Assembly: GCA_964252035.1 (NCBI GenBank)
Contig: OZ176202.1
Length of the DNA stretch: 64,000 nucleotides
Direction: 5' to 3' (one strand)
Source: Podarcis erhardii
Lineage: Eukaryota
Position 1 is the stretch's first letter; each line of letters starts with the position of its first letter. Shown here piece by piece: positions 1,336 to 63,912 of this stretch. The notes below the pieces were generated by a model. That model ran no database searches and was not told the DNA's origin. It saw nothing but the letters and a program-made list of their open reading frames with translations. Made by a program: the position numbers and the translations under genes.

Positions 1336-1441
1336 CTGTGTATTTCAGGACTCTTTTGCCGGGTGCTATGTTCTTCAGTAGACTTCTGATAAGCAGTGAA
1401 CCTCTCACTTAGGGTCATTCCAGCTGACTTGAAATATTGTT
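1336..1441 (-). CDS. BCLAF1: BCLAF1 coding exon 5 ([36 protein letters not shown])
   Basis: Acceptor ccaacag, donor gtgcag; 106 nt; phase 1 in, phase 2 out. Confidence 0.95.
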
Positions 1442-7400: not shown

Positions 7401-9816
7401 AGAACACACTTACAATCTAGATACAATAAATTGCAAGGCATTTGCCAAAGCAGTTACTGAAGCAATACAATGTGGTTTTTAGTCTCTATCCTATATATTA
7501 AAAGTACATCTAGCCCCCTAGTCTATTTCATTTGTAATCTTCTACGATATTTGTATGCCATTTATTATATATTACTAAGCTAATAGAATAATTTTTCCTT
7601 TATAAAAAATAATATATTTCAGAAAATATATTCAGTAAATTGAGAAGTGAACAGAATTGTACTATCTATCCTGAGAAACAGGATATCAGAGAAACAGATT
7701 TCCAACTGGTTGAATATTTCATTTTTAAAAGACACAACATTGCATAAATGGTTACAGCTATGTTCAGTTCTACAGATACATTATAAACAAAGGTGAGAAC
7801 CTTGTCAGCTAGAAAGTTGCCAATGTCCAGTTTAAATTTTAACAATTTCTCTGCTGAAGATAGATACAATCTTGCACTTTTGAAAAATCTAGGCCACCAC
7901 AATGGTATTTCCTTTACCAAGACAAAAGGATCTTTCAGCACTACTGCTTAACACTGCTAGAGCAACTCTTATTAAAGCTGTAAAAAATATGGGAAAATCA
8001 CTCTCATAACAGGACTCTGTTAATACACATTAATCGGCAGTATATTTCTTTAATTGCTTCCAATGAAGACACTGTAACATACTAATGAAAACGTATATTT
8101 ACAGCTCTGACTGAGAAACAATGAAAAGTTCATGTATACATTCCTAAGTCAGAACCTTAGTATAACCAGCATAAAATTAGAGAAAATTCAGGTACTTTTC
8201 ATTGCACAATATACATGTATAAAGAAGTATGCTTACTGTACTATTTATGTTATCTTTATTTTTGTAGTTATAGTTCCTACCTTTTCAGAAATTTTGCACC
8301 CTTTGTACTTTCTTGATCCCCAGCTTCAGGATAAAAAGAACGTATCCGAGATTCCTCACGTGGAGCATTCTGTGATGCAACTGCTTTAGCAGGACTTCTC
8401 CTTGAAGGAATGTGATGCAGCGGGCTATTCTGGGAAGGGCTATAGCGACTAGAGCCATTTCCAAGGGAGCCAGACCCAGACCTCTCAGGGCTATGCTGAA
8501 TGGAATGCGAGTGCTGAGGTGTGTTTTTTGCTGAGTGGACTGTGCTGAGTAAGTGGGCATCAGAGCATGAGGAACTCTGACTAGGTGGGGAAGCAATAGA
8601 AGGACTATGGGGAGACCTTGGACTGTTATCATATGCTGAAAGGCCAGGCCAAATATCACCTGAAGCTGCTGCAGATTTACTGAAATCATCTAGTGCCTCA
8701 GAAGGATCATGTTCAAATGCGCCCTTTTCCTCCTCTTGTGATTTATTTTTTAATGGACTGTCTTGTAAAGCAGCTCCCTCCGTTTTCTTTGCTTGCTTTT
8801 CTGATGACCCACGTCTTTTAGAAGATACGGGAGACTTGCTATATGGAGATGAAGACCGAGATGAAGAGGATCTTGGAGACCTAGAAGATCTGTAGGATCG
8901 GCGAGATCTGCTCCGAGATCTCTGGGAAGAGACTGACCTTCTCTTTGGACTTCTAGAACGTGAGCGACCTCGTCTAGGGCTTCGAGAGTGTCTTCTATTC
9001 CAAACAGGTCTGTAACCTCCACGGTGGTATCTACCTCCACCTCCTGGGTAATATCCTCTACCTCTTCCTCTATAGCCATAGGGGCGTCTCATTCCTCTAT
9101 TATTTCTGTAATCTCTGCGGTAATCTCTATTATAAACACGATCTCTACTGCGAGATCGTGAGTACGTCCTAGACCGAGACCTAGAACTAAGATAAATAGA
9201 AATGTTAGTGCCCATAGTTTATGACTCTTCTAAAATAAGAGTTACCCATATTATGTACAGTGGCATGGCCCAGAGACACCCCTGCCCCAAGTAGCTCCAT
9301 TAAGGTCAGGAGGCACTCTGAACAGCAGCCTTTTGAGGGTCAAAGTGCTGTGTCGATGGAATAAAATACAGAAGCCCTCCCTCAAAGAAATGTGCAGATA
9401 GCTATTCTTTCTGTTTATATGAGCTGGAGGGGGCTGGGGAGAGTCAGGGTAAAAAATCAGAGCAACTAATTCCCTTTGTTTCTCTTGTTTATAAGCATTT
9501 CTTTCTTGACATTTCATCTGCTATAAGCATTAAGTCCTGTACATCCTCTGCAACTACTCCACACCCAACGGTAGTCTACAAGCTTCAGTAGCCAAAGCAA
9601 AAAATGTCATTCTTAGCATGCATTTTAAATTTCTGCTAATAATAAAGTCTGTCTTTCAAATGTTTTAAAGAAATTAAACCACTGAGAATGTTAATAAATG
9701 GAAGAAATGTACCTGTATCTCTTTTTTCTAGAGTGTGATCTGGATCTTGACCTTGAACTGGACTGTGATCTGGATTTTGATCTTGAAGAATGTGATCTAG
9801 TGTTAGAGCGACCCAT
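1336..9816 (-). CDS. BCLAF1: BCLAF1 (Bcl-2-associated transcription factor 1), 5' partial spliced CDS: join of 9816-9713, 9186-8281, 7033-6365, 6272-6103, 1441-1336; continues beyond the left edge
   Basis: The five exons join in frame at GT-AG boundaries (104+906+669+170+106 nt). Translation [44 protein letters not shown]...[13 protein letters not shown]...[15 protein letters not shown]...[19 protein letters not shown]...SPEIHR is recognisably BCLAF1 (RS-rich N-terminus, THRAP3/BCLAF1 family). Confidence 0.97.
6103..6272 (-). CDS. BCLAF1: BCLAF1 coding exon 4 ([56 protein letters not shown])
   Basis: Acceptor tactttag, donor gtatgc; 170 nt. Confidence 0.96.
6365..7033 (-). CDS. BCLAF1: BCLAF1 coding exon 3 (YTDEESRV...PLDDSNR)
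   Basis: Acceptor tccacag, donor gtaatt; 669 nt; lies within ORF 6361..7068. Confidence 0.96.
8281..9186 (-). CDS. BCLAF1: BCLAF1 coding exon 2 (RS-rich, [10 protein letters not shown]...KFLKR)
   Basis: Acceptor tatcttag, donor gtagga; 906 nt; lies within ORF 8277..9215. Confidence 0.97.
9713..9816 (-). CDS. BCLAF1: BCLAF1 first coding exon ([34 protein letters not shown]); exon probably begins at 9837
   Basis: ATG at 9816-9814 (context gggaaaATGG); donor gtacat after 104 coding nt; candidate acceptor tttggtag at 9839-9838. Confidence 0.95.
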
Positions 9817-13199: not shown

Positions 13200-14520
13200 G
13201 CACGATCCACTGATTACTCTGCACACCTTTTCGCCTTTCTCAACAAAAGGTCTGGTGCTCAACTAGGAGCCGCAGCCAGTTACGAGCAGCTGTCTGGCAG
13301 GGCACGTGCATGCCGACATGCGTGTTCGAGGCATCCATTTAGGGCCCTCGGCGCGGCTAGTATGCCGGGAGGCTGCCAAGGACTCTCCTTCCCCCTAGCT
13401 ACACCTCGTCGCCCTTCAACTGACTGGTCGGGGTGGCGAAAGATGGAGGCAAGTTAAAACGTTATCAGGCGCCGCTCGTCGCGCGGAAAAGACTAAACAG
13501 AAAGCGACGCCCCCCTCGAGGGGCGAGGCGGGCCGCTGCCTTTGGCCCCGCCCAGCCGGCCTCGTTCCGGCCTACCTGCTTCCTCCCCCCCCCCCCGCCC
13601 CATGGGGGAAAGAGGCGGGAGGGAACGGAGAGAGATGACGGGCCCTGGTCCAAACAAGGGAGGCTGCGCGCAGTGTGGGTGTGAGGGAGATGGGAGCCGC
13701 CTCTAGCCCCCCTCCCCCTCCGTTCCTCCCGCCCTTATGAGGCAGACCAAGCCCCTCCCCCGCCTTCAGTTAGAAAAAGGGAGGGGGGTTGCGAAGGGAA
13801 GAACTCGAGGGATTTTTTTTCAAAAAATAACGGCGACTGGAAGCGGGGGGGGGGAGGGAGAGTTGCCGAGCGCGCTAACAAGGCTTCTCGCGCCGGAGGG
13901 CCAAAAGCTGGCGGGGCGGGGGGGGGGGGAGCGGCACCCATGGCGTCCGAGGAAGAACCCGAGCAGGCAGAAGACCTCTCTGGCTCCAGCCCTCCTCGGG
14001 CCGTTCGAAGTCCTGCGTTGGCTATGGCTCACCCTTCTCTGAGCGACAGCTCCGTTCGGCTCTCTACCGCTCGGCGGCCATTTCCAGTCACGGCGAAGGA
14101 AAAGAAATGGGGGGCGGCGGGGGAGAGAGACAGAGAGGAAGGAAGAACCATAGAGAGAGAAAACCACTTTCTGCGACGTTAGAATAGCACGATGGCATCA
14201 CTTCCGCTCGGAGAAAGGGCGGAGAGGAAATATGACCTCTTTACCTTGGCGTCCCCGGCTACCCGTATGAAAGATGGCGGTTAAGAAGCGGCCGAGGCGG
14301 CGTGAGTGACGCTAGCTCCCCTGGCAGGAAGTCTTCGGCGTCACGTGATCTTTCCTTGCGTTGGAAGGACGCAGGGAGAGGGAAAAGCCTATGCTGCTGA
14401 GGCGCATGCGCCTGTCGCGCTTTTTTTTTCCTTGTTAGTTATCGTCTGCGCAACAAATCACGGGTAAAAAAAAGGGTTGATTGCTCGAGTCTTCAGAGTT
14501 TTGCTATAGCTGCGGGATTA
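13200..14520. promoter_or_regulatory. CpG island / housekeeping promoter of BCLAF1, possibly bidirectional
   Basis: Abrupt GC- and CpG-rich zone in an AT-rich background. Motifs: ETS ACTTCCG (14200-14206), YY1 AAGATGGCGG (14271-14280, +), E-box GTCACGTGAT (14340-14349), NRF1 GCGCATGCGC (14402-14411). Confidence 0.85.
14033..14200 (-). other. BCLAF1: BCLAF1 non-coding exon 1 (TSS approximate)
   Basis: Consensus donor AGAAGG|gtgagc at 14032 inside the CpG island; YY1-type AAATGGCCGCC on the minus strand (14083-14073). Confidence 0.65.
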
Positions 14521-17040: not shown

Positions 17041-17068
17041 ATAAATTGAATATTTGCACCATGTGGTA

Positions 17069-17431
17069 CCGTATTTTTCGCCCTATATGATGCACTTTTC
17101 CCCCTGCAAAAATGAAGGGGAAATGTGTGTGCGTCCTATGGGGCAAATGCAGGCTTTCACTGAAGCCTGGAGAGCGAGAGGGGTCGGTGCACACGACCTC
17201 TCTCGCTCTCCAGGCTTCGCGCAGCTGTCTGCAAGGCGCAGGAGCCCGGCGCTGGGCTCCCACGGCTTGCAGAGAGTTGCCTGTTCTGGGGGCTGGGGTC
17301 GGGGAAAGCTTGGGCTTCCCCCGCCCCAGCCCCACGCCGGGGGGGGGGGATAATTTTTTTCCCTTTGTTTCCCCCCAAAAAACCTAGGTGTGCCTTATGG
17401 GACGGCGCATCCTATAGGGCGAAAAATGCGG
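17069..17431. mobile_element. Tc1/mariner-superfamily MITE, TA TSD
   Basis: TIR CCGTATTTTTCGCCCTATA ... TATAGGGCGAAAAATGCGG flanked by TA on both sides. Confidence 0.85.
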
Positions 17432-17472
17432 TATTTATATTTATTTTATGTAGGATTTCATGTACTGATTGT

Positions 17473-17620
17473 GATAGCTCAGTTGGTAGAGCATGAGACT
17501 CTTAATCTCAGGGCTGTGAGTTTGAGTCCAATGTTGGGCAAAAGGTTCCTGCATTGCAGGGGGTTGGGCTAGATGATCCTTGTAGTTCCTTCCAACTCTA
17601 CAATTCTAATATTCTATGAT
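17473..17620 (+). mobile_element. tRNA-Lys(CTT)-derived SINE with CR1-like 3' tail
   Basis: Head tagctcagttggtagagcatgagactcttaatctcagg; tail gcagggggttgggctagatgatcc...ttccaactctacaattct. Second copy at 57146-57277(-). Confidence 0.8.
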
Positions 17621-18787: not shown

Positions 18788-19013
18788 ATGGGTCAGCTGT
18801 GTACAAAGTGTGTCCAGTTGCTTTGTGACTTGGCTCTCTCAGTAAAAACACTGTCTTCGGGTCTGGTGCAGGATATTCAGGAGTGCTTGGGTCAGATCCA
18901 TGAGTGCCCCTGTCTGAAACGGAAAAACTTCAAAACAAAGCAGCTATACAAGCCTGCCCTTCAGACCCAGGAAGAGGAGATTGCTCAGGAGTTTCTGCAG
19001 CACATTGAAAGAG
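18788..19013 (+). CDS. Vac8-like exon 1 (MGQLCTKCVQLLCDL...EEEIAQEFLQHIER)
   Basis: Kozak atcATGG; donor G|gtgaga; 226 nt; phase 1. First-exon assignment rests on phase match, Kozak context and similarity to the Vac8 H1 helix. Confidence 0.8.
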
Positions 19014-22000
19014 GTGAGAAGTTTCTGTTATGAAGGTGGGGCAGCCAAAGTTGGAGAGATGTTTACTTGAGCTCGGTTGCTTTGTTTAAGATCATGCAGT
19101 TCAGTGATCGTATAAAGTGAATGACACAGAGCTGTTTATGCTTCTGCTCTTCTAAGCAATAAAGGGAGAATGGGGGAACCAGTATTTCACCAGCACCAAA
19201 TATTCAGACAAAGCAGTGGATCCCAGTTCCAGGCCGATTGATTAAATTACTCTCATTCAGCATTTGAAATCCCAGTTCTACAAAAGGCATCATAGCAAGG
19301 GGTAGACCTGTTAGCCTCTTGCATAAAAGCAACAAGAAATATTGTGGCATCTTAAAAGACTAACAAACACATACCGTACTTTTGCTACAAGCACGAGCAC
19401 TTTCCTAAGTCAACATTGAAATACTCTCTGTAAAAACCTATTAGGTATTAGAGGATTGGCGTTGAATTTATTATTTGAAAACAGAAAGACATCTTCTTCC
19501 AACTCTTAAGTGCTCCCATCTTTTGTTTTCATCCTTGATAATCAAGGAAATAGCATGGCTAAGCTGGTTTGCTAAATACAGTAACAGAAATCTAAGTTTG
19601 GAATGTCCCAACTACTCTCACAAACTGGCATATATAACAACTTTTTTCTCACATGAGGTTTGGACTGCAAAAATTCAGCTCCATCTAGTATGCTAATTTT
19701 AAAGGAGAGAATATTTCTACATGGAAGTTTGTCTCTGTCGTGTTTTATCTGTTGCTTTAAATTCTGTGCATTTGGACTCTTCAGGTATTTAACTTCTTCT
19801 GACACAATTCAGACTCTGTTATTATCACATCTTTCTTAAGGTTTTGAAATGTCACCACTTGGCAAGGTTTCCCTAGAGGCTCTGAGGACCTTGGCGTTTT
19901 CAGAGAACCCCAGCTTGCAAAAGTCTGCTGCTCTCTATTACTTGAACATAAATCATCAAAACTGTAAGATCCATTCCATACTCTCTTTTTTAAAAAAATG
20001 TAGAAACCTGGAGAAGCAAAACAATTTCTCCCAAACGTAGCTGAGTTGTGCCCAAGGCAGTCTTACTGGTTCCCTAGCATGTGTGAATTGGGTCTAGCCC
20101 CTTCTAATGCAAGTTCTGTGGATATTTACTTGGAGCCCAGATAATGTGGCACAACTTTTGCAGTTACTAGTCTCCCATTTTATTATTTTATAGAGGTGGG
20201 CTGGCTTTTTACTCATATGAGAGGTTGGCAGAAGAGGGGCTAGTAAAAATAAGTAATACAGGTTTAGTTTTCACGTGAGTTTGCACAGACAGCTGAAAGG
20301 AGGGCTAGAAGGTATTTTGAAAGGCAAAGTAGGTCATCTAGGTGTTGCTCCAAAAGCATCAAGTGTTTGAAGATGTAAGGGACAAGTGTTCCAGAAGAGC
20401 TTTTTGCAATCAGCATTTCATCTCATCCTTGCAGTGAACATCCAGCTGCCTCGAGAGCATCTGGAAATATACTATGCTTTGTTGAAGTCTAATGACTTGG
20501 AGGTTCAGCAGATTTCATCATCGTCCCTTGTGAATTTCTTACTGGAAGGAAGTGGTGAGTAAATGCCCAAGATACCATATCCTGAAGTCTCCATCAGCAT
20601 CAGCTATGATCTTAGGAACTACCACTGTTCAGTTGCCCTGGTATTTTATTTGAAGGGCAGGATATAAATTCCTATACTAAAAAGTGATAATCAGTAGGAT
20701 GGATGTTTGCCCTGATAAAATGTGGGGTTTTTTTTGGGGGGGGGGAGCATTCATTCAGAGGATGGGTTTTGCTTACTTCTCGTACCAAAGGGGTGAGAAA
20801 TCATTTATTCCGGTGTAAGATGCACCAGTGATATTGTGCGCTGATTGCAATCCTTTTCTCTCTCCAGTATATAGCTGAATTAAAGGCACTGTAAACATAA
20901 CATTTACTCCTGCTTTTACTGACAAACAGTAACCAAGGATCATGTCGTCCAAATGGATCTAATTGAGCCAATTCTGGAACTGCTTGAGTCTGAAGATGCC
21001 ACAGTCCAGTGTAATTCCTGTGCATGCATAATGACACTAGCTGTCACAGGTGAGGAGCGTGTCCAAAGCATAGCGCAATAATCAGGTCCAGGGACAATGT
21101 CACACCCACACCTTGTGATTGAGAGGTAATGATGTGCCTTATCGTTATAGAAATTCTGAATCAAGAAGAGCTGAATTCTGCGAGCAGAGTGGATTATTCA
21201 CATTGGTATGCTATAACTAGACGTGGTCAGTGTAGTGGGGCTGAGCTTGTGGAGGCACACTTCTGACACCAGTTTGACTGCAGCTTACCTGGATGGCTCT
21301 GGGTGGTGACACGCTTGGTGCTTCACAGACACACAAGTGGAGCCAATGCAGTCCTCCAGGATTGCCTAAGAACTGCCTAGTCACTGGCCCCATACTGTGC
21401 AATAAATATAAAGTTGGCCTTGGAGTCCTGGGTTCAGATATTAATAAATGATGAAGTGTACTTTCTAAAGTCAGGTTTTGCTTCAAGGTGACCCATAGCA
21501 ATAAGCTTCTTCACAAAAACCTGATGGTAAACTCTTAACATTATTCATTCTGCCACTAGGCACCCAGGACCCCCAACTCATATGCTGCAACTGTTTTCGT
21601 GCTGTCCACTCTCTGTTCTTTAAAGTGTGCCTGGAGGAACATGGATACTTCTTCCTCCAAAGAAACCTCATTGATTTCTATTTTGCCCTGTTGTTTTGCC
21701 AGATGTCAGCCATGAAGCCATCGCAGCAGGAGGAGGAGTGGTACCCTTACTGGCCCTTTCTAAATCCTATGATCCAAGAGTCCAACAAAATGCAGCTGGA
21801 GCAATTTTTAACCTCACGCAATCAGGTATTAGGCTGCAGGAGATTTATTTCAATGGGCCAAGTGCATTGACACAGAAATTTGTGGCAAGGGAAACTTATC
21901 GTCAAAGCTATTGTTTTCTTTAAAATGAAATGTTTTACTTCAAGTACAATGCTAAATCATGTCTACTCAGCGGGAAAGCCAATTGATTCCAATTGGGCTT

Positions 22001-24948
22001 ATTCCCAGAAAATGCTATTTTTAGCTCTTATCTATGCAGTGATGATAAGGAGAATGTTCATTTGGTCAAAATAGCTCATTAGCAATACCACTCTTCCCTT
22101 GCAGAATGGATTCATCAAATTTTGTTTCGACAAGGTGCTCTTCCAGTCCTCACCATTTTGTTACAGTCTCCCGATTCGGAAGTACAGGTAAACTTGACAT
22201 TAAAACAGAAGTTTTTGAGCATTCAAAGCTGTGGAAATAGTCAGCTGCTCAACTGAACCTACAGATGCAGGAAAAGATAGACGAGACAGTAGTCTTTTAA
22301 CATTTTAACTTCCAGAAATTAGTAATTCAATGGTGTTGCACATACTTTTGCTTGGAGGGGGGTACTACATATGTTTGTGCACCTTGGAAATGAACTGCTA
22401 AGCTTTTTAGTGAAATGAAAAAACAGGTCATTGCAGCTTGAAGAAAGGTGCTCATTTCATAGTTCAGATTTGTTGTAGGGTTAAAGAAAATAGCCAGGGG
22501 GTATTCCAGTTCCTCAGTTCTGTTCTCAACTTTTGTTTGGAAATAGCTATTAATAGGCACTAACCTGTTTGAGATTCAAGAACTGAACAAATACTTCTTT
22601 CTCATCTTCAAATAGGCTAGTGCAAGAGAAATGCAAACATGTAAAATACATGACTGGAGTGTAGATTTTTATTCTGTTCTTACTATGACTCCTGAGAATT
22701 GTAAACAGCCTCATGATGAGTATTTTATGAATGCAAAGAATGCCATTTGCCTAGCAGAATCTATGCAGTATGCCTAGCAGAAGGGGACAAAATAGTGTGT
22801 GAGTGATTTGTTAAGAAAAGGGATCTGGTCATCTCACCGATGCAGTATTGTCCCCCTTTTTTGACTCTTAGACACCCAGACTCTCTACACAGTGTGGACT
22901 GTAGCGATCACAGTTGTGTCTCATTGGACAAATATTCTTTTTTTCCTGGGACATTCCCAAAACTCCTGGAGGTGTACTACAGTGCCAATCCAGAAAATGC
23001 AGGGAGATGCTGTATGCAAATACTCTCTCAATTTTATCACCCTAGGAACGCCATCATCAGTCATGGTCCCTTTCATTTGCTGTGAGGTCTTGACCACAGT
23101 TTAAGAACCCTTGGCCACAAGCTTTCCTTTCTCAAAATCACAACACTTCTCTTTCTTACAGTATTATAGCTGTGCAGCTCTGAGCAACATGGCCACAAAC
23201 TCGCAGCACCATAAAGCCATGCTCCAAACCGGTGATAGGTTTCTTCTGCAGATGCTCCTTTTCCTTCTGTCTTCATCTGTGGACAAGGTAAAGCTGTGGA
23301 TTATGCAGGTTTGTTTTACTAACAGCCCCCCTGGTTTATTCAGAAATATTATTTTGATACCAGTGGGGTGTATTTCCAAGTAAGGTATGCTTAGGACTGC
23401 AGGGTAAATATCTTGTGTATAGGGAAATGACTGAAAAGATGCTTTCTTCAGCATGGGGGCGCAAGAATACACAAAGGCTGGAGTTAGCTAGATGTGGCAT
23501 CTTCCATGAATTTCTAAGAGATCAAACTCAGAATCTCCTACAGTCAGAGGGGATTCCATGTTTAAATAATGGTGAGATCTCTTGGTTCAATATTTTCATT
23601 CTCACAGTGATGGCCTGGGAATATAGGGATGGGCTTTTTCCTAATCTCTGCCTGGAGAAGATTGTGAGGTAGTGTGGAGAGTAAAATTTCACAATTACAG
23701 ATCTTCCCAAACAAATGCAAAATTAACTGGATTGTTCACTAAGGCTGCATACACACCATGCATTTAAAGCACGTGACTTCCCTCGGAGTATTCTGAGCAC
23801 TGTAGTTTACCCCTCACAGAGCTTCCATTTGTAGCACTGTTAAACTACAGCTCCATTATTCTTTTCTTTTTGGGGGGATTGTCATGTGTTTTAAATGTTT
23901 TAAATATATGGTGTGTATGCACCTTAAATCAAGAGCAATTTGTTCTTCTGAAAGGCTACACATCCTTGTACTTTTAGGCACCCATAAGTGGCGCTTTTTT
24001 GAGTATCTCTCAGATATCTATGGGGCACTCTCACAGTTGGCTTTAAAGGCTTAGTTTTGCCTCATGTCGCCACAGAGGACATGCTTACATTTTAACTTTA
24101 CCCATCATTGACCCATAATCCTGTCAGAACATTTTGGAGGTTTAGCAAGTATTGCACGAAGCTATTGTGGACCAGTCAGCTTTGCGGCCTTTTCACAGCC
24201 AAAAGTTCTTTCTCTGTTGGGTTCTGATTTCTTTGTTTTCTGCAACTAGGTTTCCAACCAGGCTTGTGTCTGTCTCAGGAATTTAGCCGCGAGTGGTAAG
24301 TACTACAGTCCTAGCTTGCTAATAAACGAAAAATTGCAGTCACTTAAAACATACAAAAATAGAACCCCCTCCTTCCTGTGTTTTGTACAGTCTAGCCTCT
24401 GGAAGGAATGTCCTCAAGTCACTCTTTGTTCTTTTAAGTAAGATGAATACCATGTTTTGGTTTCAGGCACGTGGATGGTGTGACTTTTTTTTTTTTGAAA
24501 GTTAATGAACCCTTCAGTTACCAGAGGCTGTGAGAGTGACAGTACTGTTGTTCTAAAATATACCAACAATCACGGATTCAGTTTTTCAGAGAAGGTGACT
24601 GCAAACCAATCCAGCATTCAGACTGATGTAAAGATTAGTAAAACTTGATTGACCAATACCTTACAATGCTCAAGGCACATTTCTGCCACAGATGTTTGGG
24701 GCGGGAGAAAGATCATGTGGAAGTTTTACACCATCTAGAGAAGGAGAAAAGAGACTGAAGGAGGAGTTGGTGAAAAATATCCCTGGCCACTGACATTTTT
24801 GCTCATGTGCTTGTAATGAAAGATGTCTCTCTGTGTTTTAAATCGACAAGCAAGATCATTAATATGGATTATAACTACAAATCCATACACTTCCTTTTAC
24901 CATTCTTAAACTGTCAATTCTGTGAGGATAAAGTAGACAAGAATAAGG

Positions 24949-24992
<44 letters not shown>

Positions 24993-25144
24993 CTTTTTCT
25001 GGGGGGCCGCAGGGGTATGCATACCCCTAAACATTTTGTGAATCTAAGTTTGGCCTCATTGAGGGGCAGTATTTCAATAGTATTCCTATGAATAGGAAAA
25101 TGAGAGTACCCCTATACATTCCCCCCCGAAAAAAGCACTGTTTT

Positions 25145-25182
<38 letters not shown>

Positions 25183-28100
25183 ATCACTTGCGCCTAGCAG
25201 CTGATTTTGCACAACCACAATCCCAACCAAAGTTACAGAAACACAACTCTTTGTACCCTTTCTATCAATTTCAGTCCCCTGATTCTGAAGAGAATTCTTT
25301 CCAGCAGTGCCTTTCTACAAACACCAGTCCAACCCTCTTGTGCAGTTTGGTCTTCATCTTCATTTGACTTTTCATTAAAATCAGAACCTAAAGTTTAACT
25401 TCTATACTGTCATAACATAACATTGCCTGATCTGTGAAGTCCAGCTGACTTGATTGAGTCAGTCTAGAGGAGGCCCCTTTCTCTCACAAATCCTTTTTCT
25501 CCAAAGCAGCTTCTATTGATCTGCACACATGACCTTGAGCAACCTTCTCATTTTCCAAACAGAGAGTGGTCAGACCAGCATCCTTGCTTTGGGGATCCCG
25601 TCCCACCTGCTCCCTCTCCTGGCATCTAACAGGAAAGACACTCAGCACAATTCCATCATTCTTCTCCGGATTTTATCCCAGCACCCAGACAACCAGGTAC
25701 ACATTTCTGTTTTATATTACCCTTTGCCTTGTAAGCTTTAGTCAAATGTGCATGGCCGTAATGCTCCGAGGCAGCTCAACCTTGAAAGATGACAGTGGAC
25801 GAAAGTTTCATCAAAGGTAACACATTTAAAATGACAGTTTGACGCGGCCAGGTGATCAGTAGACAATAATTCAAAATTCATTCTGAAAAGGCTTCAGCAT
25901 GCATTTGAAAGTGTGGGATGATGTGCATATCCAGAAATAAGGTTGGAAAGGGAGCGCTGGGAACAAATTCTGATTATAATCATATTGGGTTCTAATTTGT
26001 CTTCTTGAGATTCACATTCTGTAGCAAATATCCATTTGTGGTTGTGATGGATGGCATAGCTGCTTTGGCATTGGAGAAAATGTTCTGTGACAGAGGAAAC
26101 CTGAACAATTAATCCTCAGTAGAGATGTTTATATTGTCTTCTATTGGGTCAGCTTTTCATCTTGGTTTGCCCAGACTACTGGTTTCAATGCCCTCCAGCC
26201 TGGGGTTGTTTTTTTTAAAGACCTTTTCAAGGATTCCCATTCTGCTCTGACCTGAATTCCAAGTGAAGTAGAAAAGGAGCTCTCCATGGGAACCCCAGCA
26301 GGAAAACAAACTGTGGGACAAAGCTAACATTTCCAACCAAGATGAACTAATGTTTCAGTGGTTACCAACACTACACTGTGTTCCTAGGGAAGAAGAAATC
26401 GTTTGTTCTTTGGTGACTTTGGGTTTGGTTGACTTCATAGCACCTTCATTCCTTAACAAACAGAAAAGCCCCACATCTTTGTAATATAAACTTGCCATCT
26501 GCATTCGGATGTGGGAGTGATATATGAGTCTCTATATGGTGGGACACAGGCATCAATAAAATGAATGGAGGTTGTAACATGGGAGGTTTGTGGTGGAACA
26601 GGAAAGTCAAATCCTGCATGTACCATTGGATGCGCACACACATTTCAAGATCATCTGATGTGGTTTGGAGGTAGTGCAGGCTTGATTTCTCTGCATTGCT
26701 GCCGTGAGTTGGGACTGAAACACTAAGAGACAACAATTTGTGGAGTTTTTCATAATTCTCCATCCCAGCTTTGTAGCTCCTAAATTGCCATACACTTGTT
26801 GCAGTTCATCCTAAATGTAAAGAGTTTTAAAAACTTAAAGCATATCTCTTTGATTCCTTAGTAATTCATTCACTCTACTCTTTTTGGTGCCTGCTTAAAA
26901 AAGAAAAGCATGTTTGTTTCAAAAGTTCCAGTGTATCTGAAGAAGTGTGCATGCACACGAAAGCTCATACCTAGAACTAACTTAGTTGGTCTTTAAGGTG
27001 CTACTGGAAGGAATTTTTTGTTTTGTTTCAAAAGGTTTGTCTGGACATGCAGAATATTGGCATGTGTTTTCTGGTTTTAGTTTATTGCTGATTTTTAATT
27101 TTTTTAAAAAATGTTGTAAATACTTGTTTTAATTGGGGATGGTTTTTTTACTGATTATTGTTTTTATTCTTTTTTTACCTGCTTTGAGGTTTTATTAACA
27201 ATTAAGTGATATATATATCTATATATCTCAATCACCCATCTCTAGTCCCATTCACAGTGGTATGGTAGAACCATGTCTCTTCTGCTGCCTTCATTTCAGC
27301 TACTCACTGGCTACCTTTCCCTTTGCAGGATGCACTGATGTGTGATGAAGTGCTGCAGGCGGTAGGGAAGCTGCTGCTCACCTGGAAAATGGACCCAGTG
27401 ATTGTAGGTCACGCTGCCTGCTTTATTAAAAATCTCAGCCTTTCCAGAAGCATACAGGTGAGTGCCAAGTCTCCCTTTCAGGATTACACATTGTTCTGAA
27501 GGCTTCACTTCACTAAGTGAGATTAAAATAAGGTTACCAGATTTTTTTCAATGAATCTGGGGACACTTTTCAACTTCAATGGATTTTGTATGGGGACTGA
27601 TTTGTAAATCTGGGGACTGTCCCCGGGAAACAGGGACATCTGCTAACCTTATAATTAAAATGAAACATCGTCTTTGCTTCATTCAAGGGAGTAAATGACC
27701 ATGTGTTTCAAAAAGTACACAAGAAAAATCTTACCAACAAATAAAAAGCAAGTTGTGACTTTTACGCCTTCACTGTAGGCTTTTTGGAAATTTGGCTTTG
27801 TTGGTATACATGCTTTTTCAACTAGGTTGTTCCTGTTCCTCCTCCTTCTCCTTCATTAAATTTGTATACTGTTCTCCATTTGAAGACCATACGGCAGTTC
27901 ACAACATAAAAATACAAAATGAGAACACAAAATACATAATAAAACAAAAGCAAAAACCAACCAATAACACCCCTTCCCACAAACACATTTAAAAGGCCAT
28001 AGAATGCTCAACCAACCAAAGACCTGGCTATAGAGAAACATTTTTGCCTGGCACCTAAGGCTATATAATGAAGGCACCAGATGAGCCTCCCTGGGGAGAG

Positions 28101-31100
28101 CATTCCACAAACAGGGAGCAACTGCAGAAAAGGCCCATTTTCATGTTGCCATCCTCCAGACCTCTCATGGAGGAGGCACACAAAGAAGGGCCTTAGATGA
28201 TAATTGCTCAAGAAAGTGGAAACCCACTGTGTATGGATAAATGTTTGCAGGAAATATGCCATATATTCTTGGCTCCTCATACCATCTCCCAGATTGCCTT
28301 GTTATCACACACTTGATGGCTTCTTGTGAAATGAAGGCTATTGTAACACATATCATTGCAGACTTACTCTGTATTCATTAATTTCAAGCACATCCGTGTA
28401 ATTTGAACTCTCCTGGTGGGACAGTCTCAGGGCGTCATGATGCATAACTAGGGCATTTAAGAGAACATGTATTTGCATAGATTAAATCCCCACAGATGCC
28501 TTTGTTGCACACATTTCTGGGCTTAACAGCTGAATAGGCACAGCCCTGAAGGCCCAAGGCAAACTATGAGCTTGGCATCTATTATTGCGGCGGGGGGGGG
28601 GGGGACACACCATAATTTTCAGAATGAATGTAACAACATCATCTACTTTTGTTATTTGCAGAGAGTCATAGAAAGTCCATGCATTGAAGGACTTTTTCAA
28701 GCTGTCCAGAGTGTAGACTTTCTAGAAGAGGAATCTCTTCACTGTGTGATGTCTTCTCTTGTTGACCTGATGAAACATGGTAAGGGGGCATCCAGAGTGC
28801 TGAGTGGATGGGCTGATAGCACACACATTTTGTACTCATTGATTTCCGTTGCTGCTGCCAACTTTACAGCACAGTGTTATGCATGTCTGCTCAGAAGGAA
28901 GTGCTGTAGCCTTTACCTACGCAAAAGTCAGTGTGCATAGGGTTGCAGCAGCCTTACAATTTTGGGGCACAGAGGGAACCAAAGGGCAGTCATAAAAATC
29001 AACGGATTCCCACAGTCAGTTCTACGTTATCCCACTGGTTGCATAGCTAACAGAGCTGCTAATAGGAGTGAAACACAGCAGACAAGTGATTTTAATCCCA
29101 ACTCAAAGTGTTGTATCGGTAACATAGTGTTGACATTGCTAGTAATTTCTCTAGTGCTTCTAGACCAGCAGAGGCAAACATGGTACCCTCTAGGTGTTTA
29201 CTAGCTGAATGTATGGAAAGGGAGGTAGCAGGGCAGCAGAGCATCACATTTCCCATTGGTGAAACCCTCCCTAAGGAATCTTCCCACTTATATCTGCTTC
29301 TGAACATTTTGACACCCCCCTTTCTATGTATGTATTTCAGTCTTCTGAAATCCATTTTACTGGCCTCTGAAGCTCTGCTAGTCTCTTTTCAGCCTTGGCC
29401 CTAGGGCTGTTCATTTGTCTCCTTTTATTTCAACTCTGCTGATTTAGTCTTTTACTCTGCTCTTCTACCACCAGAGGGAGCCACAGTGCGCATGCTGGAA
29501 TTGGCGGATGACTCAGTGGTATGCAGTCTGGCGACACTGGCTGGCCAAGTGGAACAAGCAGAGCTTTCGTTCCACGCTGCCCTTGTGATCAAACACCTCC
29601 TACAGCACAGTACGTATCAATGTAAAAGATCTGATGTTTGCATTTCCAGCATGCCTGATATCACTCAAGTGACAACAACAGAAGTCCCATGGGCCCAAAC
29701 AGGTTGAATAGCAGGGGAGAACACTGTACCAGTCAGCTTTGACAAAACTTTTATTTATTTTCTAATCCTGCTAATTCTAGGATAGTTTTCAGAGAGTTAC
29801 CTGGGCTACAATAGGACTCCCTAAGATTTTTTTTTCTTTCTGGACTAAGTGGCAGCTGCATCTATCAGTTGTCCCACACCAGCAGACTCCTTTGGGTATA
29901 AAGAATACATGTTGAGTTCATGGCAGGAGCTTCTGTCTTGCTTGTGTAAATCCTTTTCTCAGTATTACATTTCCCTATTGAAGATAGCAACACTGCACAA
30001 AGCCGCTAAAATATTTGTGCATCACTGTGCGTCATATGAAGTGACGCTTGATTTGAATAACCAATGATAACATAAACATAATGTTTCTGTTGAATGCACC
30101 ATATAACATTTTAAAATAACAGATGTTATAAGTGTTAGATTCAGAATAATCACAGTGAGTGTATATTATTATTATTACAGCGGCCAAAATCAGCAAGAAA
30201 TCTTATTATTCTGAGTTACAAACTTCAACTTTATGAACCAAACCTGAAGTTTAAGGCTGAAGTTTAATACCATACCAAACCTGAAGTTTAAGGCTGAAGT
30301 TTAATACCAAACCTGAAGTTTAATATCATACTGGCATTCATGATTGGTATATATGAATTCTGAATATTATTAATTAGCATTATAAAATCTTTATTTATTA
30401 AGGTCTCAAGGCAAATCACATAGTAAACAAATATAAAAAACACAATAAAAATGATCGCACTAAACATCGGCCCAAGCATACATTTCCCACCATAAAATTA
30501 TCATAAGCATTCCCAAACTATGAATACCAATTTATAATTTGTCATTCACCCAACAACTTAGTAACAAGAAAACCAAATAGTGCATCAGCGATGTAATGGG
30601 GTATCAACATTTTACAGTGCATGTTTACTCAGAAGAAATCCCACTTTGTTCAGTGACTTACTCCCAGGTTAAGTGTGTAAAATGTTGCCTCGTGCATTCA
30701 GTTTTGTAATTATTCCTGTCTCCAAATTAATTGCACAGAAGAGGTGGTGTCTTTGTTGAAATCTCATATGAGCAAGGTACAGCAATACCTCATCAAGTAT
30801 CTTATTCACCAAGAGAATCGCTTTCAGCATCTGGGCATATCCACTCTCTGCATATTACAGAAAGGTATGGACTGCTGTATCACTCGCCACATAGCATCCC
30901 ATGGGGTTCCTATGCTATGGCATAACAGCTAAGCTCATTAGTACTTACCAGAAGCACCGCAGCTATAATGCGCAGCTGAGTCCTGCCTGTTTCTGGTTAT
31001 GAAAACCAAAGTCCTCCTTTAAAAAAGGTTTGGTGGAAAGTTAATTGACTCTCATTTCACTGAGAATGCAATCAGAACTTTATACAGGCTCATTTGCCGT

Positions 31101-31844
31101 ATTCATTACAAGGCTTCCTACTGGAAGTGAATCTGTTCTCATAATCGCATATATGAATCCTGGAAACAGCTATTTACGGTTCTCATAAAAAAGTGGGGAG
31201 TAGTCTTCTTTTTTGGCATTTTTAAAAAATCACAGTGGAAAAGTAGTTATGCATGCACCTTCCAGCACCAAACAAACCTGACTTACTTTTTTAAAAAATG
31301 TATCGGTTAACATGGAATGCAAAATAACTTCCATGCATAAATGTTTGATAAATGGCTTAGATTATCATCACACTCTGTGTCTGAAAGTGGGGAAATACCC
31401 CTAGCAAAGAAAGCAGGAAGCAAGATTCTCAGGAGACATTGTTGAACAAGTAAATGATCAAAGGATGTATCTAACTTACTCTTGGAAAGTATTAAAACAA
31501 CAAGGAATATATTAGGTGTGAGTAATAGATAACTCCTGTTCTCAAAGTTGGTCAATTTGGCTTTGATATGAATGTCAGATTTTTGTAGATCCAAGCTGAA
31601 TGCAAGACAGGAGAACGAAACCTCTCTCCAATGTTTTGTATAGTTGTGGACCAGGGCAAGATGTACACATATGATGAGTTGTGCAGGTCTAGAAGTTGAG
31701 TTGTTGCTTCCCTATTTTTTAGATGCAGAGTTTTCATCAGCATTCAACCAGAGCCAACTGAAGAAGCACCTTGACCAAGTCCGTCAACAAACTGCAGAAA
31801 CACAGGAGCTTCTCAGTATTGCTGTCAGACATATGGACACCTGA
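18788..31844 (+). CDS. Vac8-like armadillo-repeat protein, complete 14-exon CDS, 1731 nt / 576 aa
   Basis: Exons 18788-19013, 19841-19963, 20435-20554, 20930-21049, 21703-21825, 22105-22187, 23162-23287, 24250-24295, 25563-25696, 27329-27457, 28662-28779, 29475-29609, 30739-30864, 31723-31844. All introns are GT-AG, phases are consistent, there is no internal stop, and it ends in TGA. ARM consensus segments (LLxLLxSxDxxVQxNAxGAIxNL) align by eye with yeast Vac8. Confidence 0.9.
19841..19963 (+). CDS. Vac8-like exon 2 (GFEMSPLGKVSLEALRTLAFSENPSLQKSAALYYLNINHQN)
   Basis: Acceptor ctttcttaag, donor gtaaga; 123 nt; resembles Vac8 [21 protein letters not shown]. Confidence 0.9.
20435..20554 (+). 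CDS. Vac8-like exon 3 (LNIQLPREHLEIYYALLKSNDLEVQQISSSSLVNFLLEGS)
   Basis: Acceptor catccttgcag, donor gtgagt; 120 nt. Not in the ORF track. Confidence 0.88.
20930..21049 (+). CDS. Vac8-like exon 4 (VTKDHVVQMDLIEPILELLESEDATVQCNSCACIMTLAVT)
   Basis: Acceptor aaacag, donor gtgagg; 120 nt; resembles Vac8 [35 protein letters not shown]. Confidence 0.9.
21703..21825 (+). CDS. Vac8-like exon 5 (DVSHEAIAAGGGVVPLLALSKSYDPRVQQNAAGAIFNLTQS)
   Basis: Acceptor gttttgccag, donor gtatta; 123 nt; canonical ARM repeat. Confidence 0.93.
22105..22187 (+). CDS. Vac8-like exon 6 (EWIHQILFRQGALPVLTILLQSPDSEVQ)
   Basis: Acceptor ttcccttgcag, donor gtaaac; 83 nt; phase 1 to 0. Confidence 0.92.
23162..23287 (+). 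CDS. Vac8-like exon 7 (YYSCAALSNMATNSQHHKAMLQTGDRFLLQMLLFLLSSSVDK)
   Basis: Acceptor ctttcttacag, donor gtaaag; 126 nt; resembles Vac8 VQYYCTTALSNIAVD. Confidence 0.93.
24250..24295 (+). CDS. Vac8-like exon 8 (VSNQACVCLRNLAAS)
   Basis: Acceptor gcaactag, donor gtaagt; 46 nt; resembles Vac8 VKCQATLALRNLAS. Confidence 0.9.
24950..24990. repeat. (CA)n microsatellite
   Basis: Directly visible. Confidence 0.97.
24990..25140. mobile_element. Short MITE ending in AAAAAAGCACTG
   Basis: cagctttttctgggggg...gaaaaaagcactg; sister copy at 15944-16104. Confidence 0.6.
25144..25181. repeat. (TG)n(AG)n compound microsatellite
   Basis: Directly visible. Confidence 0.95.
25563..25696 (+). CDS. Vac8-like exon 9 (ESGQTSILALGIPSHLLPLLASNRKDTQHNSIILLRILSQHPDNQ)
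   Basis: Acceptor ttccaaacag, donor gtacac; 134 nt. Confidence 0.88.
26926..27021 (+). mobile_element. Penelope-like terminal fragment with 13-bp TSD TTTGTTTCAAAAG
   Basis: ctgaagaagtgtgcatgcacacgaaagctcatacc...cttagttggtctttaaggtgctactggaagg; duplication at 26913-26925 and 27022-27034. Confidence 0.65.
27329..27457 (+). CDS. Vac8-like exon 10 (DALMCDEVLQAVGKLLLTWKMDPVIVGHAACFIKNLSLSRSIQ)
   Basis: Acceptor ccctttgcag, donor gtgagt; 129 nt. Not in the ORF track. Confidence 0.88.
27529..27651. mobile_element. hAT-like MITE
   Basis: TIR TAAGGTTACCAGAT ... ATCTGCTAACCTTA. Confidence 0.65.
27870..28240 (-). mobile_element. L2 LINE 3' end
   Basis: Minus-strand translation WNALPREAHLVPSLYSLRCQAKMFLYSQVF is typical of the L2 ORF2 C-terminus, followed by a T-rich tail. 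Confidence 0.75.
28662..28779 (+). CDS. Vac8-like exon 11 (RVIESPCIEGLFQAVQSVDFLEEESLHCVMSSLVDLMKH)
   Basis: Acceptor ttatttgcag, donor gtaagg; 118 nt; phase 0 to 1. Confidence 0.82.
29475..29609 (+). CDS. Vac8-like exon 12 (EGATVRMLELADDSVVCSLATLAGQVEQAELSFHAALVIKHLLQH)
   Basis: Acceptor ctaccaccag, donor gtacgt; 135 nt. Confidence 0.85.
30237..30324. repeat. Local tandem duplication (unit accaaacctgaagtttaaggctgaagtttaat, about 2.6 copies)
   Basis: Units start at 30237, 30274 and 30306; the core ctgaagtttaa occurs five times. Confidence 0.9.
30739..30864 (+). CDS. Vac8-like exon 13 (KEVVSLLKSHMSKVQQYLIKYLIHQENRFQHLGISTLCILQK)
   Basis: Acceptor ttgcacag, donor gtatgg; 126 nt; resembles Vac8 FLIRFLKSDYATFEHIALWTILQL. 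Confidence 0.88.
31723..31844 (+). CDS. Vac8-like exon 14 with stop (DAEFSSAFNQSQLKKHLDQVRQQTAETQELLSIAVRHMDT*)
   Basis: Acceptor ctattttttag; 122 nt to TGA; phase consistent. Confidence 0.8.
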
Positions 31845-34379: not shown

Positions 34380-36384
34380 AACACAGCAGTTTTGTATTAA
34401 CCTAAAGTGCATCATCTGAAACCCATCTCCAACTCGAACACAAAAGAGCTAAGATGAAATTTCCTCTATTCAGCTCCCCAAATAGACACATTATATTTGT
34501 TCAACAGCAACCAGTGCACCAACAAGTAAATATTAAAAATGCACATGTTTTATATGAAGTTTACTTGATACGTATATCCTATATAGAAGCAAAAACTACA
34601 TATTTGGGGCATTTAAAAAAATAATAATAGCTATGTACAGGGAGCACAGAGAACAACATAAAAATATTTTGTTTTTGCCATACCACAATTACTAAAAAGT
34701 CCAGACTGGCTTTTGTTCCTCTCCTCCAATTCACTCTAGCCCACAAAGCAGCATCGTCTCACATAATTCCCAACACAGTTGGCATAATTTTCTTTGACAC
34801 AGCATGTACCCAATCAATTACATGAATTCAAGTGTGTTGCAAATTACTTCTCTTTATGACAGGGGGAAATGTCAGGAGCAGCACATAGAATCACAGGAAG
34901 AAGAAGAAGAGTTTGGATTTGATATCCCGCCTTTCACTCCCTTTAAGGAGTCTCAAAGCGGCTAACATTCTCCTTTCCCTTCCTCCCCCACAACAAACAC
35001 TCTGTGAGGTGAGTGGGGCTGAGAGACTTCAGAGAAGTGTGACTGGCCCAAGGTCACCCAGCAGCTGCATGTGGAGGAGCGGAGACGCAAACCCGGTTCC
35101 CCAGATTACGAGACTACCGCTCTTAACCACTACACCATACTGGCTCTCCACAGGATATGAGAGCTTCCTGTTGAACATACAACTTTCACCTGAGTAGCCT
35201 GCAGCACTTGTACGCTGAAACAATCCTAACCAGGGTTGCTCAGTCTAAGTCAATCAGGCTACAGGCAGCCCAAGTCCTGCTGTCCCTGCCAGAACCTTAA
35301 CAGAAAGGACTGGAGCCTTCCAAATTATTTTCTATTGCAGTACTTGTTGACCACACACAGAGATCTGCATTTCCAAAACACCATGAGAAAAAGATCTGGT
35401 CCGGGTGTGTAGAAGTCTCTTGCATCAATCACATCATCAGCTAGAGAGAGCTCTCCACTCCCCCCATTACTATCCAAGTATGGGGCTGAATGACCCACAT
35501 CATGCCAGAAGATTTTGCTTTTATCCCCTGAATTCCCTTACAGAAGGGAAACTAGGAAAAATCAAGTTTACAATGTAGTTTTTAAGCACATTTTCTATGA
35601 TTTATTTTGTACAGAACAAAATTAATAAATACATTATCTAGGATAACAACAGGTTTTCCATTTCATCCATGAAAAAATAATGCTTTCAATTTTTCACATT
35701 TTAAAACCTGCTATGTTATTTTATTTTTTAGAAGAAAATGCAAGAAGACAGTAGTGATGCCTAAATATACAGAATGTCCATGTAGGAGTTACATTTACAA
35801 GAACCTGATACAGAAGCCTCTATGTTGCCCCCATAATTAAGAGTTCTCTGCAATAATATTTAAACCAAAAGGCTTAAATAAAAAAACACCCCAGTAGCCC
35901 TACTTGTAGAGCAGTGAGGCATTTACTTTTCAAGTATTCAATCCGTAAAATGTAAAAGATATTTTGCTGATTTTAAATACCTTTTAAAACCAAATACCCA
36001 TCTTCAAAAACAACAGAAAACAAGTCCATTACCCCAATCAGCCCGTTATTGTTAGAATCCAGTGAAGCTTTTGTCTTCAAGAATGCAGAAAATATCTGTT
36101 ATGCTAACCAAAGGAACTTGCTGGATATAAGCAATTTATGCACATGAAACATGATTTTTCCTAGTGGTGAGATCTATTTGATAGAAAGGTAATCCAAGTC
36201 TATTCCCAATAAATTCTTCTGCTGGTTTTACTATGGCCTTAAAAAACCCCCCAAAAAAAACAGTGTCCAAGAAATCTTTAGAAAACTCGAGAGTGCAAAA
36301 ACTACCACACTCCTTCATAGCATGGAAGGAACTCCACTGGCTGCAGAGACTTTTATGCCACCTTTGGTAATTTGTAAGCAGAGA
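34380..36384 (-). other. MAP7: MAP7 3'UTR (distal end uncertain)
   Basis: AT-rich sequence after the TGA. Several minus-strand AATAAA hexamers (plus-strand tttatt near 35601 and 35721). Contains a SINE at 34897-35148. Confidence 0.45.
34897..35148 (-). mobile_element. Squam3-like tRNA SINE with (CTT)n tail
   Basis: Minus strand begins gagagccagtatggtgtagtggttaagagcggtag...gtgaccttgggccagtcac; ends in a simple-repeat tail. Confidence 0.75.

Positions 36385-63912
<27,528 letters not shown>

What the first reader, a model, noticed from the sequence alone, without database searches (positions are those of the whole stretch)
24277..27430. The Vac8 cationic triad (ligand-binding groove) appears conserved as R317/R358/K401
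Known: in Vac8 crystal structures, Arg276, Arg317 and Arg359 form a cationic triad that binds Nvj1 and Atg13. Seen: the aligned positions are R317 (codon 24277-24279, VCLRNL), R358 (25667-25669, ILLRIL) and K401 (27428-27430, CFIKNL), spaced 41 and 43 aa apart versus 41 and 42 in yeast. The groove Asn of helix 3 is kept in several repeats (VNF, FNL, SNM, RNL, KNL). Inference: the peptide-binding groove is functional, so a vertebrate partner (ATG13-like or an unknown nuclear-envelope protein) should exist.
Basis: partly seen in the sequence, partly recalled or inferred. Interest (0 to 1): 0.75.

Follow-up and report, generated by a model that had tools for sequence, protein, structure and literature searches.

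The report
Vac8-like armadillo gene; basic triad only partly conserved
The three basic residues are real and sit where yeast Vac8 has its ligand-binding arginines, inside an intact, selected Vac8-like gene, but related species have tryptophan at the middle position, so the "triad" is not a conserved unit.

Summary
The three codons are exactly as described: AGG 24277-79 (VCLRNL), CGG 25667-69 (ILLRIL) and AAA 27428-30 (CFIKNL), 41 and 43 residues apart. They lie in exons 8, 9 and 10 of an intact 14-exon gene on the + strand (18788-31844). All introns are GT-AG and the product is 576 aa.

Exons 2, 5 and 7 each find yeast Vac8 as the only or best natural solved structure, in collinear order. Alignment puts R317 opposite Vac8 R276 and R358 opposite Vac8 R317. 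K401 matches R359 only by repeat order.

The gene is under purifying selection (dN/dS 0.19-0.31). Helix 3 of repeats 5-8 is its best-kept part, so a working groove is plausible.

The triad itself is not conserved across relatives:
- Position 358 is Trp in all 13 sequences of a second clade.
- The Asn beside it (Vac8 N318) is Ile everywhere.
- R317 is kept in 5 of 5 species, and 401 is K or R in 5 of 5.

The Vac8-binding part of Atg13 is yeast-only, so an ATG13-like partner has no support. The spliced protein could not be submitted to the tools, so no structure model or full-length search was made. No full-length relative turned up in the protein library.

The parts
18788..31844 (+). Whole coding region of the Vac8-like armadillo-repeat gene: 14 exons, 576 aa
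   Evidence: Exon chain with GT-AG at all 13 introns, one open frame, stop at 31842-31844. Exons 6-14 are confirmed by orthologous exons in L003 and L006.
18788..19013 (+). Exon 1 (aa 1-76). Starts MGQLCTKC, a candidate N-myristoyl-Gly plus palmitoyl-Cys motif like Vac8 MGSCCSC.
   Evidence: ATG with A at -3 and G at +4, strong donor. No orthologue or PDB support, so this is the least certain exon.
19841..19963 (+). Exon 2 (repeat 1)
   Evidence: The only PDB hits are Vac8, E 6e-4, aligned to Vac8 49-75.
20435..20554 (+). Exon 3 (repeat 2, ladder N150)
   Evidence: Splice sites and phase only.
20930..21049 (+). Exon 4 (repeat 3, ladder position is T192)
   Evidence: Pfam Arm PF00514, E 4.6e-6.
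21703..21825 (+). Exon 5 (repeat 4, ladder N233)
   Evidence: Pfam Arm, E 3.2e-6. Vac8 is the best natural PDB hit, E 2e-13, aligned to Vac8 162-197.
22105..22187 (+). Exon 6 (first part of repeat 5)
   Evidence: Pfam Arm, E 4.9e-4. Orthologous exons in L003 and L006.
23162..23287 (+). Exon 7. Starts Y266 Y267, matching Vac8 Y226 Y227; ladder N274.
   Evidence: The only PDB hits are Vac8, E 2.5e-4, aligned to Vac8 226-260. 72% identical to L003 and L006.
24250..24295 (+). Exon 8 (helix 3 of repeat 6), VSNQACVCLRNLAAS
   Evidence: 13/15 identical in L003, L006 and L008, and 12/15 in L009.
24277..24279 (+). R317 (AGG), matching Vac8 R276; followed by N318 (24280-24282), matching Vac8 N277
   Evidence: Arg in all 5 species, with codons AGG, AGA and CGG.
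25563..25696 (+). Exon 9 (repeat 7)
   Evidence: The orthologue profile aligns to Vac8 284-325.
25667..25669 (+). R358 (CGG), matching Vac8 R317; followed by I359 (25670-25672) where Vac8 has N318
   Evidence: TGG (Trp) in every sequence of the other clade.
27329..27457 (+). Exon 10 (repeat 8)
   Evidence: Orthologous exons in L001, L002, L003 and L006.
27428..27430 (+). K401 (AAA), matching Vac8 R359 by repeat order; followed by N402 (27431-27433)
   Evidence: K in four sequences and R in L002.
28662..28779 (+). Exon 11
   Evidence: Orthologous exons in L002, L003 and L006.
29475..29609 (+). Exon 12
   Evidence: tblastx and tblastn to L002, L003 and L006.
30739..30864 (+). Exon 13
31723..31844 (+). 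Exon 14, with a stop codon at the same place in L003 and L006

Best explanation
The window carries an intact, expressed-type gene for a 576-aa protein of about twelve armadillo repeats. It is collinear with fungal Vac8 (578 aa) and lies between a BCLAF1-family gene and a MAP7-family gene. R317, R358 and K401 occupy the helix-3 position just before the ladder asparagine in repeats 6, 7 and 8, the positions of Vac8 R276, R317 and R359. By homology these face the concave groove that binds extended peptides (shown for Vac8, inferred here). The family keeps this groove under selection. Helix 3 of repeats 5-8, the YY pair, four of five central ladder Asn, R317 and a K or R at 401 are all conserved. 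The centre of the groove has changed chemistry: Ile replaces Vac8 N318 in all members, and position 358 is Arg in this species but Trp in a whole second clade. The most likely working model is a membrane-anchored adaptor (the N-terminal MG..C..C motif is inferred only). It would bind an extended peptide of an unknown partner through an Asn ladder flanked by two basic residues, with a specificity different from yeast Vac8. The full cationic triad is a feature of this lineage, not of the gene family.
For: - Codons and numbering.
- Intact 14-exon open frame and conserved stop.
- Vac8 is the only or best natural solved structure for exons 2, 5 and 7, in collinear order.
- The exon 9 profile aligns without gaps to Vac8 284-325.
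- The R276 fragment is best placed at R317.
- dN/dS is 0.19-0.31 between clades and 0.30 within the second clade over 327 codons.
- Helix 3 of repeats 5-8 is 81% identical against 59% for the rest, p 0.005.
- R317 is kept across three different codons, and 401 is K or R.
- Trp at 358 in 13 of 13 sequences, Ile at 359 in all.
- Roles of Vac8 R317, N318, N277, N234 and H196 in ligand binding.
Against: - No structure model could be made, so groove exposure is inferred from homology only.
- Exons 9 and 10 have no significant similarity to Vac8 on their own (E 0.32).
- Exons 1-5 have no orthologue support because the contigs end upstream of exon 6.
- Only two clades were sampled, and their species are unknown.
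- No expression evidence.
- Helix 3 also packs the hydrophobic core, so its conservation is not proof of ligand binding.
- Membership of the Vac8 clade rather than the ARMC3 clade was not tested by a tree.
Confidence: 0.6

Rival explanations
1. One reading: the Vac8 cationic triad is conserved as a unit. The groove would then work as in yeast and bind an ATG13-like or nuclear-envelope (Nvj1-like) partner.
For: All three positions are basic in the window, at the right helix-3 register. R317 and 401 are conserved as basic residues.
Against: Position 358 is Trp in 13 of 13 sequences of another clade that is itself under purifying selection. The N318 equivalent is Ile in all sequences. The Vac8-binding tail of Atg13 is yeast-specific. 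The role of R276 and R359 could not be checked in the held literature.
Confidence: 0.12
2. The basic residues are generic armadillo helix-3 features, the common L-R-N-L motif of many armadillo proteins. They would be kept for fold or solubility, and the protein would use another surface or have no peptide ligand in the groove.
For: Helix 3 conservation can reflect core packing. The Vac8 repeat-8 fragment matches other repeats of the window protein better than exon 10, which shows how generic these helices are. The middle residue is freely Arg or Trp. That L-R-N-L is frequent in catenin-type proteins is from my own knowledge.
Against: The pattern of the -1 residue along the repeats (L, V, M, F, S, R, R, K) resembles that of Vac8 where tool-derived fragments show it: G, T, L, S, R, R, R for repeats 2-8. 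Basic residues appear only in repeats 6-8 in both proteins, and position 317 is held as Arg through synonymous changes.
Confidence: 0.18
3. The gene is not a Vac8 orthologue but a member of another armadillo family, for example an ARMC3-like paralogue. ARMC3 is called the mammalian homologue of Vac8 in the literature. Residue-by-residue transfer from Vac8 would then be unsafe.
For: ARMC3 is named as the Vac8 homologue, and ARMC3, ARMC4 and Vac8 are separate clades. No ARMC3 sequence was available here for comparison, and no tree was built.
Against: Four exons map collinearly to Vac8, with ODAD2/ARMC4, importin alpha, plakophilin and beta-catenin far weaker. The length is 576 aa against 578. 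The N-terminal MG..C..C is as in Vac8. ARMC3 is about 870 aa and lies at another locus (own knowledge).
Confidence: 0.1

Closest known systems
Vac8 (vacuolar protein 8) of Saccharomyces cerevisiae; structures 5XJG, 6KBM, 6KBN, 7YCJ
   Same: Length is 576 aa against 578, about twelve armadillo repeats in the same order. The YY pair at the start of helix 3 of repeat 5 is kept. Ladder Asn are present at the equivalents of N193, N234, N277 and N360. Basic residues occur only at the -1 position of repeats 6-8. The N terminus starts MG followed by cysteines. Identity to Vac8 is about 50% in exons 2 and 5, 36% in exon 7, and 10 of 23 around R276.
   Different: The N318 equivalent is Ile. The R359 equivalent is Lys. 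The R317 equivalent is Trp in a related clade. H196 is Gln. Repeat 3 lacks its Asn. The N-terminal region is about 40 residues longer, and the Vac8 H1 helix was not detected. The known partners Nvj1, Vac17 and the Atg13 tail are fungal.
ARMC3, described as the mammalian homologue of Vac8
   Same: An armadillo-repeat protein of animals that is related to Vac8.
   Different: It forms a separate clade in published trees. It is a longer protein at a different locus and has no MG-Cys N terminus (own knowledge, not tested here).
Importin alpha and beta-catenin peptide-binding grooves
   Same: Helix-3 Asn ladder that binds the backbone of extended peptides. The Trp at 358 in the second clade recalls the Trp-Asn arrays of importin alpha (own knowledge).
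   Different: Much weaker sequence similarity (E 0.3-0.9 for exon 5).

Membership tests
Vac8 family | Armadillo repeat array collinear with Vac8 over its length | tested here: met
   Exon 2 maps to Vac8 49-75, exon 5 to 162-197, exon 7 to 226-260 and the exon 9 profile to 284-325. The C-terminal third was not mapped.
Vac8 family | Vac8 is the closest natural protein among solved structures | tested here: met
   It is the only hit for exons 2 and 7. For exon 5 it is the best natural hit at E 2e-13, against 0.017 or worse for plakophilin, ODAD2, importin alpha and beta-catenin.
Vac8 family | N-terminal Gly2 for myristoylation followed by palmitoylated cysteines | tested here: inconclusive
   The sequence MGQLCTKC is present. 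However, exon 1 has no orthologue support, and acylation cannot be tested in silico here.
Vac8 family | Three arginines (R276, R317, R359) on helix 3 of repeats 6-8 | tested here: inconclusive
   The window has R, R, K. The second clade has R, W, K or R. The feature is met in the window but not in the gene family.
Vac8 family | Helix-3 Asn ladder (N234, N277, N318 contact Vac17) | tested here: not met
   N274 and N318 are kept, but the equivalent of Vac8 N318 is I359 in the window and in all orthologues.
Vac8 family | Groups with Vac8 rather than ARMC3 or ARMC4 in a phylogeny | not tested
   No full-length sequences were obtainable by reference.
Vac8 family | Residues face the concave groove in three dimensions | not testable with these tools
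The spliced 576-aa product has no reference, so the step was left out.
Armadillo repeat (Pfam PF00514) | Match to the Arm profile above the gathering score | tested here: met
   Exons 4 and 5 score 26.9 and 27.4 bits against a cut-off of 20.6. Exon 6 scores 20.5.

The most novel reading that the evidence does not exclude
This would be a true Vac8 orthologue retained in some non-mammalian vertebrates at the BCLAF1-MAP7 locus. It would be acylated at its N terminus, missing from current protein collections, and distinct from ARMC3. Vertebrates outside mammals would then keep a Vac8-type organelle-tethering adaptor whose partners are unknown.
Probability: 0.25. Interest if true: 0.6.

Novelty: new member of a known kind. 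Interest (0 to 1): 0.4.

Why it matters
Vac8 is the model for how one armadillo groove serves several organelle-contact and autophagy partners. In animals only ARMC3 has been discussed as its relative. A second vertebrate gene much closer to Vac8 in architecture would give a testable entry point into Vac8-type tethering outside fungi. The natural Arg/Trp difference at the central groove position is a ready-made specificity experiment. The specific claim of a conserved cationic triad, and the predicted ATG13-like partner, should not be carried forward as stated.

Tried and rejected
- **Single-exon PDB searches.** Exons 9 and 10 gave no hits at E<=10. A five-species profile of exon 10 also missed Vac8. 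Exon 1 gave only a non-significant saposin B resemblance.
- **All-library protein search with exon 10.** It returned three hits, none full length.
- **Word search with window exon 9.** Nothing was found. Exon 10 gave one protein. The exon 9 ORF of L003 gave 13 proteins, all from one clade.
- **Metagenome scan with an exon 7 alignment.** It returned only the contig already in hand and a sibling.
- **Species of the contigs.** SRA and ENA accessions were not found in papers. Pfam was blank on a 358-aa ORF in L003.
- **Literature.** The 2017 Vac8-Nvj1 paper that defines the triad is not held, and no held paper contains both 'Vac8' and 'cationic triad'. The triad's published role is therefore from my own knowledge, apart from R317.
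- **Pseudogene idea.** Rejected: the open frame and splice sites are intact in two clades, and dN/dS is 0.2-0.3.
- **Steps not run.** The spliced 576-aa protein has no reference, so I did not type it into any tool. There was therefore no structure prediction, fold search, full-length homologue search or tree.
- **Operator limits.** The N runs at 41841-41981 and 46838-46999 were left as they are. None of the fetched contigs was taken for human: no Alu-like signature was found in any of L001-L009. L010 is a stretch of the same contig as L003; L011, a separate 1,159-bp contig from a sibling sample, was not screened and not analysed.
Full report
**Observation.** AGG 24277-24279 lies in A-C-V-C-L-R-N-L, CGG 25667-25669 in I-L-L-R-I-L, and AAA 27428-27430 in C-F-I-K-N-L. 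I built a gene model on the + strand from open stretches and splice signals and completed its 3' end by comparison with related contigs.

The model has 14 exons spanning 18788-31844. Every intron is GT-AG, and there is one open frame of 576 codons ending at 31842-31844. Exons 2-5 are 120-123 nt each, all in phase 1, so each holds one armadillo repeat.

**Surroundings.** On the minus strand upstream lie exons of a BCLAF1/THRAP3-family gene (Pfam PF15440, E down to 1.5e-29). On the minus strand downstream lie exons of a MAP7-family gene (PF05672, E 4.7e-13). The gene is therefore a separate unit between two well-known vertebrate genes.

**What the gene is.** Pfam sees Arm repeats in exons 4, 5 and 6. 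Against all solved structures:
- Exon 2 finds only Vac8 (E 6e-4, Vac8 residues 49-75).
- Exon 7 finds only Vac8 (E 2.5e-4, residues 226-260, starting at the Y226 Y227 pair).
- Exon 5 finds Vac8 as the best natural protein (E 2e-13, residues 162-197). Plakophilin, ODAD2/ARMC4, importin alpha and beta-catenin are at E 0.017 to 0.9.

PDB chain numbers plus 9 give Vac8 residue numbers. I checked this against Y226/Y227, N234 and H196 as named in the structure papers. The matches are in the same order along both proteins, and the lengths are 576 and 578 aa. The first exon begins M-G-Q-L-C-T-K-C, which resembles the acylated N terminus of Vac8. That exon has no support from orthologues or from the PDB.

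**Do the three residues align with the Vac8 triad?** The Vac8 fragments printed by the tool show Arg at residues 276, 317 and 359, each followed by Asn.
- *R317.* The fragment 256-278 has its best ungapped placement at residue 297 of the window protein. That puts R276 on R317, with 10 of 23 residues identical, and 1 of 2000 shuffles reaches the score.
- *R358.* A profile of exon 9 from five species aligns without gaps to Vac8 284-325 and puts the R358 column on Vac8 R317. The E-value is only 0.32, but it is the best armadillo hit and the collinear place.
- *K401.* Exon 10 has no detectable specific similarity to Vac8, and the collinear placement is only the fifth best. K401 to R359 therefore rests on it being the next repeat and on the shared [RK]-N-L register.

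The residue just before the ladder position runs L, V, M, F, S, R, R, K along repeats 1-8. Basic residues occur only in repeats 6-8, as in the Vac8 fragments.

**Published role of the Vac8 residues.** R317 hydrogen-bonds His669 of Atg13 (PMC7469494). R317, N318, N277, N234 and H196 hold backbone carbonyls of Vac17 (PMC10161063). The paper that names the cationic triad is not held, and no held paper contains both 'Vac8' and that phrase. The roles of R276 and R359 are therefore from my own knowledge.

**Relatives.** The spliced protein has no reference, so I did not type it into any tool and searched with single exons instead. The all-library search with exon 10 found three proteins, none full length. 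Two were exon-plus-intron ORFs from assembled reads. Word searches and contig look-ups gave these genomic contigs:

| Contig(s) | Exons covered | Note |
|---|---|---|
| L001 | exon 10 | closest to the window |
| L002 | exons 10-12 | |
| L003, L004, L005 | exons 6-14 (L005: exon 10 only) | L003 and L004 have identical coding sequence and L005 matches L003 exactly; taken as one species |
| L006, L007 | exons 6-14 (L007: 6-9) | |
| L008, L009 | exons 8-9 | |

There are also 13 distinct exon-9 ORFs (P0005-P0017). No Alu-like signature was found in any of L001-L009, and I took none of the fetched contigs for human. The species are unknown. By synonymous distance the window and L001 form one group. 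All the others form a second group (dS above 1 to the window, 0.14-0.39 among themselves).

**Conservation of the sites**:

| Position | Window | Orthologues |
|---|---|---|
| 317 | Arg (AGG) | Arg in all five species; codons AGG, AGA, CGG |
| 318 | Asn | Asn in all |
| 358 | Arg (CGG) | TGG (Trp) in every sequence of the second group: 13 of 13 ORFs, and all four of its species read at DNA level |
| 359 | Ile | Ile in all (Vac8 has N318 here) |
| 401 | Lys | Lys in four sequences, Arg in one |
| 402 | Asn | Asn in all |

The three Arg codons at 317 mean the residue is held through synonymous change. CGG to TGG is the usual CpG transition, and yeast has Arg at this position, so Trp is probably the derived state. 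It is nevertheless fixed across a clade in which the gene is still under selection.

**Is the gene functional?** Exons 6-11 have canonical splice sites in L003, and the stop codon is at the same place in L003 and L006. dN/dS is 0.19-0.25 between the window and L003 or L006 over 327 codons, and 0.30 between L003 and L006. Amino-acid identity between the groups is only 59%, so the protein evolves fast but under constraint. Within repeats 5-8, the 13 residues around each ladder position are 81% identical against 59% for the rest (Fisher p 0.005 for L003, 0.024 for L006).

**Interpretation.** The gene is best read as a Vac8-like adaptor whose central groove is conserved. Two basic residues (317, 401) and most ladder Asn are kept, but the centre is altered: Ile at 359 everywhere, and Arg or Trp at 358. 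The inference that the yeast triad is conserved and points to an ATG13-like partner is not. The Vac8-binding part of Atg13 (567-695) lies in a tail (522-738) present only in yeast Atg13.

**Comparison with what is known.** The literature calls ARMC3 the mammalian homologue of Vac8. Published trees put Vac8, ARMC3 and ARMC4 in separate clades. I found no paper describing a vertebrate Vac8-type gene. By architecture the window gene is closer to Vac8 than ARMC3 is, but no tree could be built here. The blank in the protein library rests on a single 43-aa query and does not prove the gene is unannotated.

**Limits.**
- No structure prediction, fold search, full-length search or phylogeny was run, for the reason given above.
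- Exons 1-5 lack orthologue support.
- Only two clades of unknown species were sampled.
- There is no expression evidence.
- The N runs were left untouched.

Noticed in passing
window 1323-9218 (-) and 43831-46826 (-): The flanking genes are a BCLAF1/THRAP3-family gene and a MAP7-family gene, both on the minus strand. The Vac8-like gene sits between them on the plus strand.
   Followed up: partly
window 27329-27457 (query); whole protein library: A search of 1.84 billion representative proteins with exon 10 found no full-length protein, only two exon-plus-intron ORFs and one unrelated repeat protein. The gene may be unannotated in public protein sets.
   Followed up: partly
window 35557-36368; L003 17652-18448: An 836-bp non-coding block is 77% identical between the two clades. 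It is longer and better kept than any exon of the gene. It may be the MAP7 3' UTR or a regulatory element.
   Followed up: no
window 26212-26374 (intron 9, inside the finding's span); L003 5893-6052; L006 5582-5742: A single-copy intronic element is about 70% identical across clades, with no shared open frame.
   Followed up: partly
window 17475-17532 (+): Rfam tRNA match of 33.5 bits in a G+C-rich stretch about 1.3 kb upstream of exon 1. It is probably a tRNA-derived SINE rather than a gene.
   Followed up: no
window 18788-18890 (+): The first 34 residues (G-x-x-C-x-x-C...) give a weak, non-significant resemblance to saposin B (E 0.56). The same stretch carries the candidate myristoyl/palmitoyl motif.
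   Followed up: partly
window 19841-21825 (+): Exons 2-5 are 120-123 nt and all in phase 1-1, so each armadillo repeat is one exon. Repeats 5 and 6 are split differently (exons 6-8).
   Followed up: no
window 13300-14400: A CpG island (G+C 0.63, CpG observed/expected 0.84) lies between the BCLAF1-family exons and the Vac8-like gene, probably the BCLAF1 promoter. A weaker G+C-rich patch lies at 17050-17450.
   Followed up: no
window about 24860-25200 (intron 8): TG/CA dinucleotide microsatellites, seen as runs of VCVCVC in the translations.
   Followed up: no
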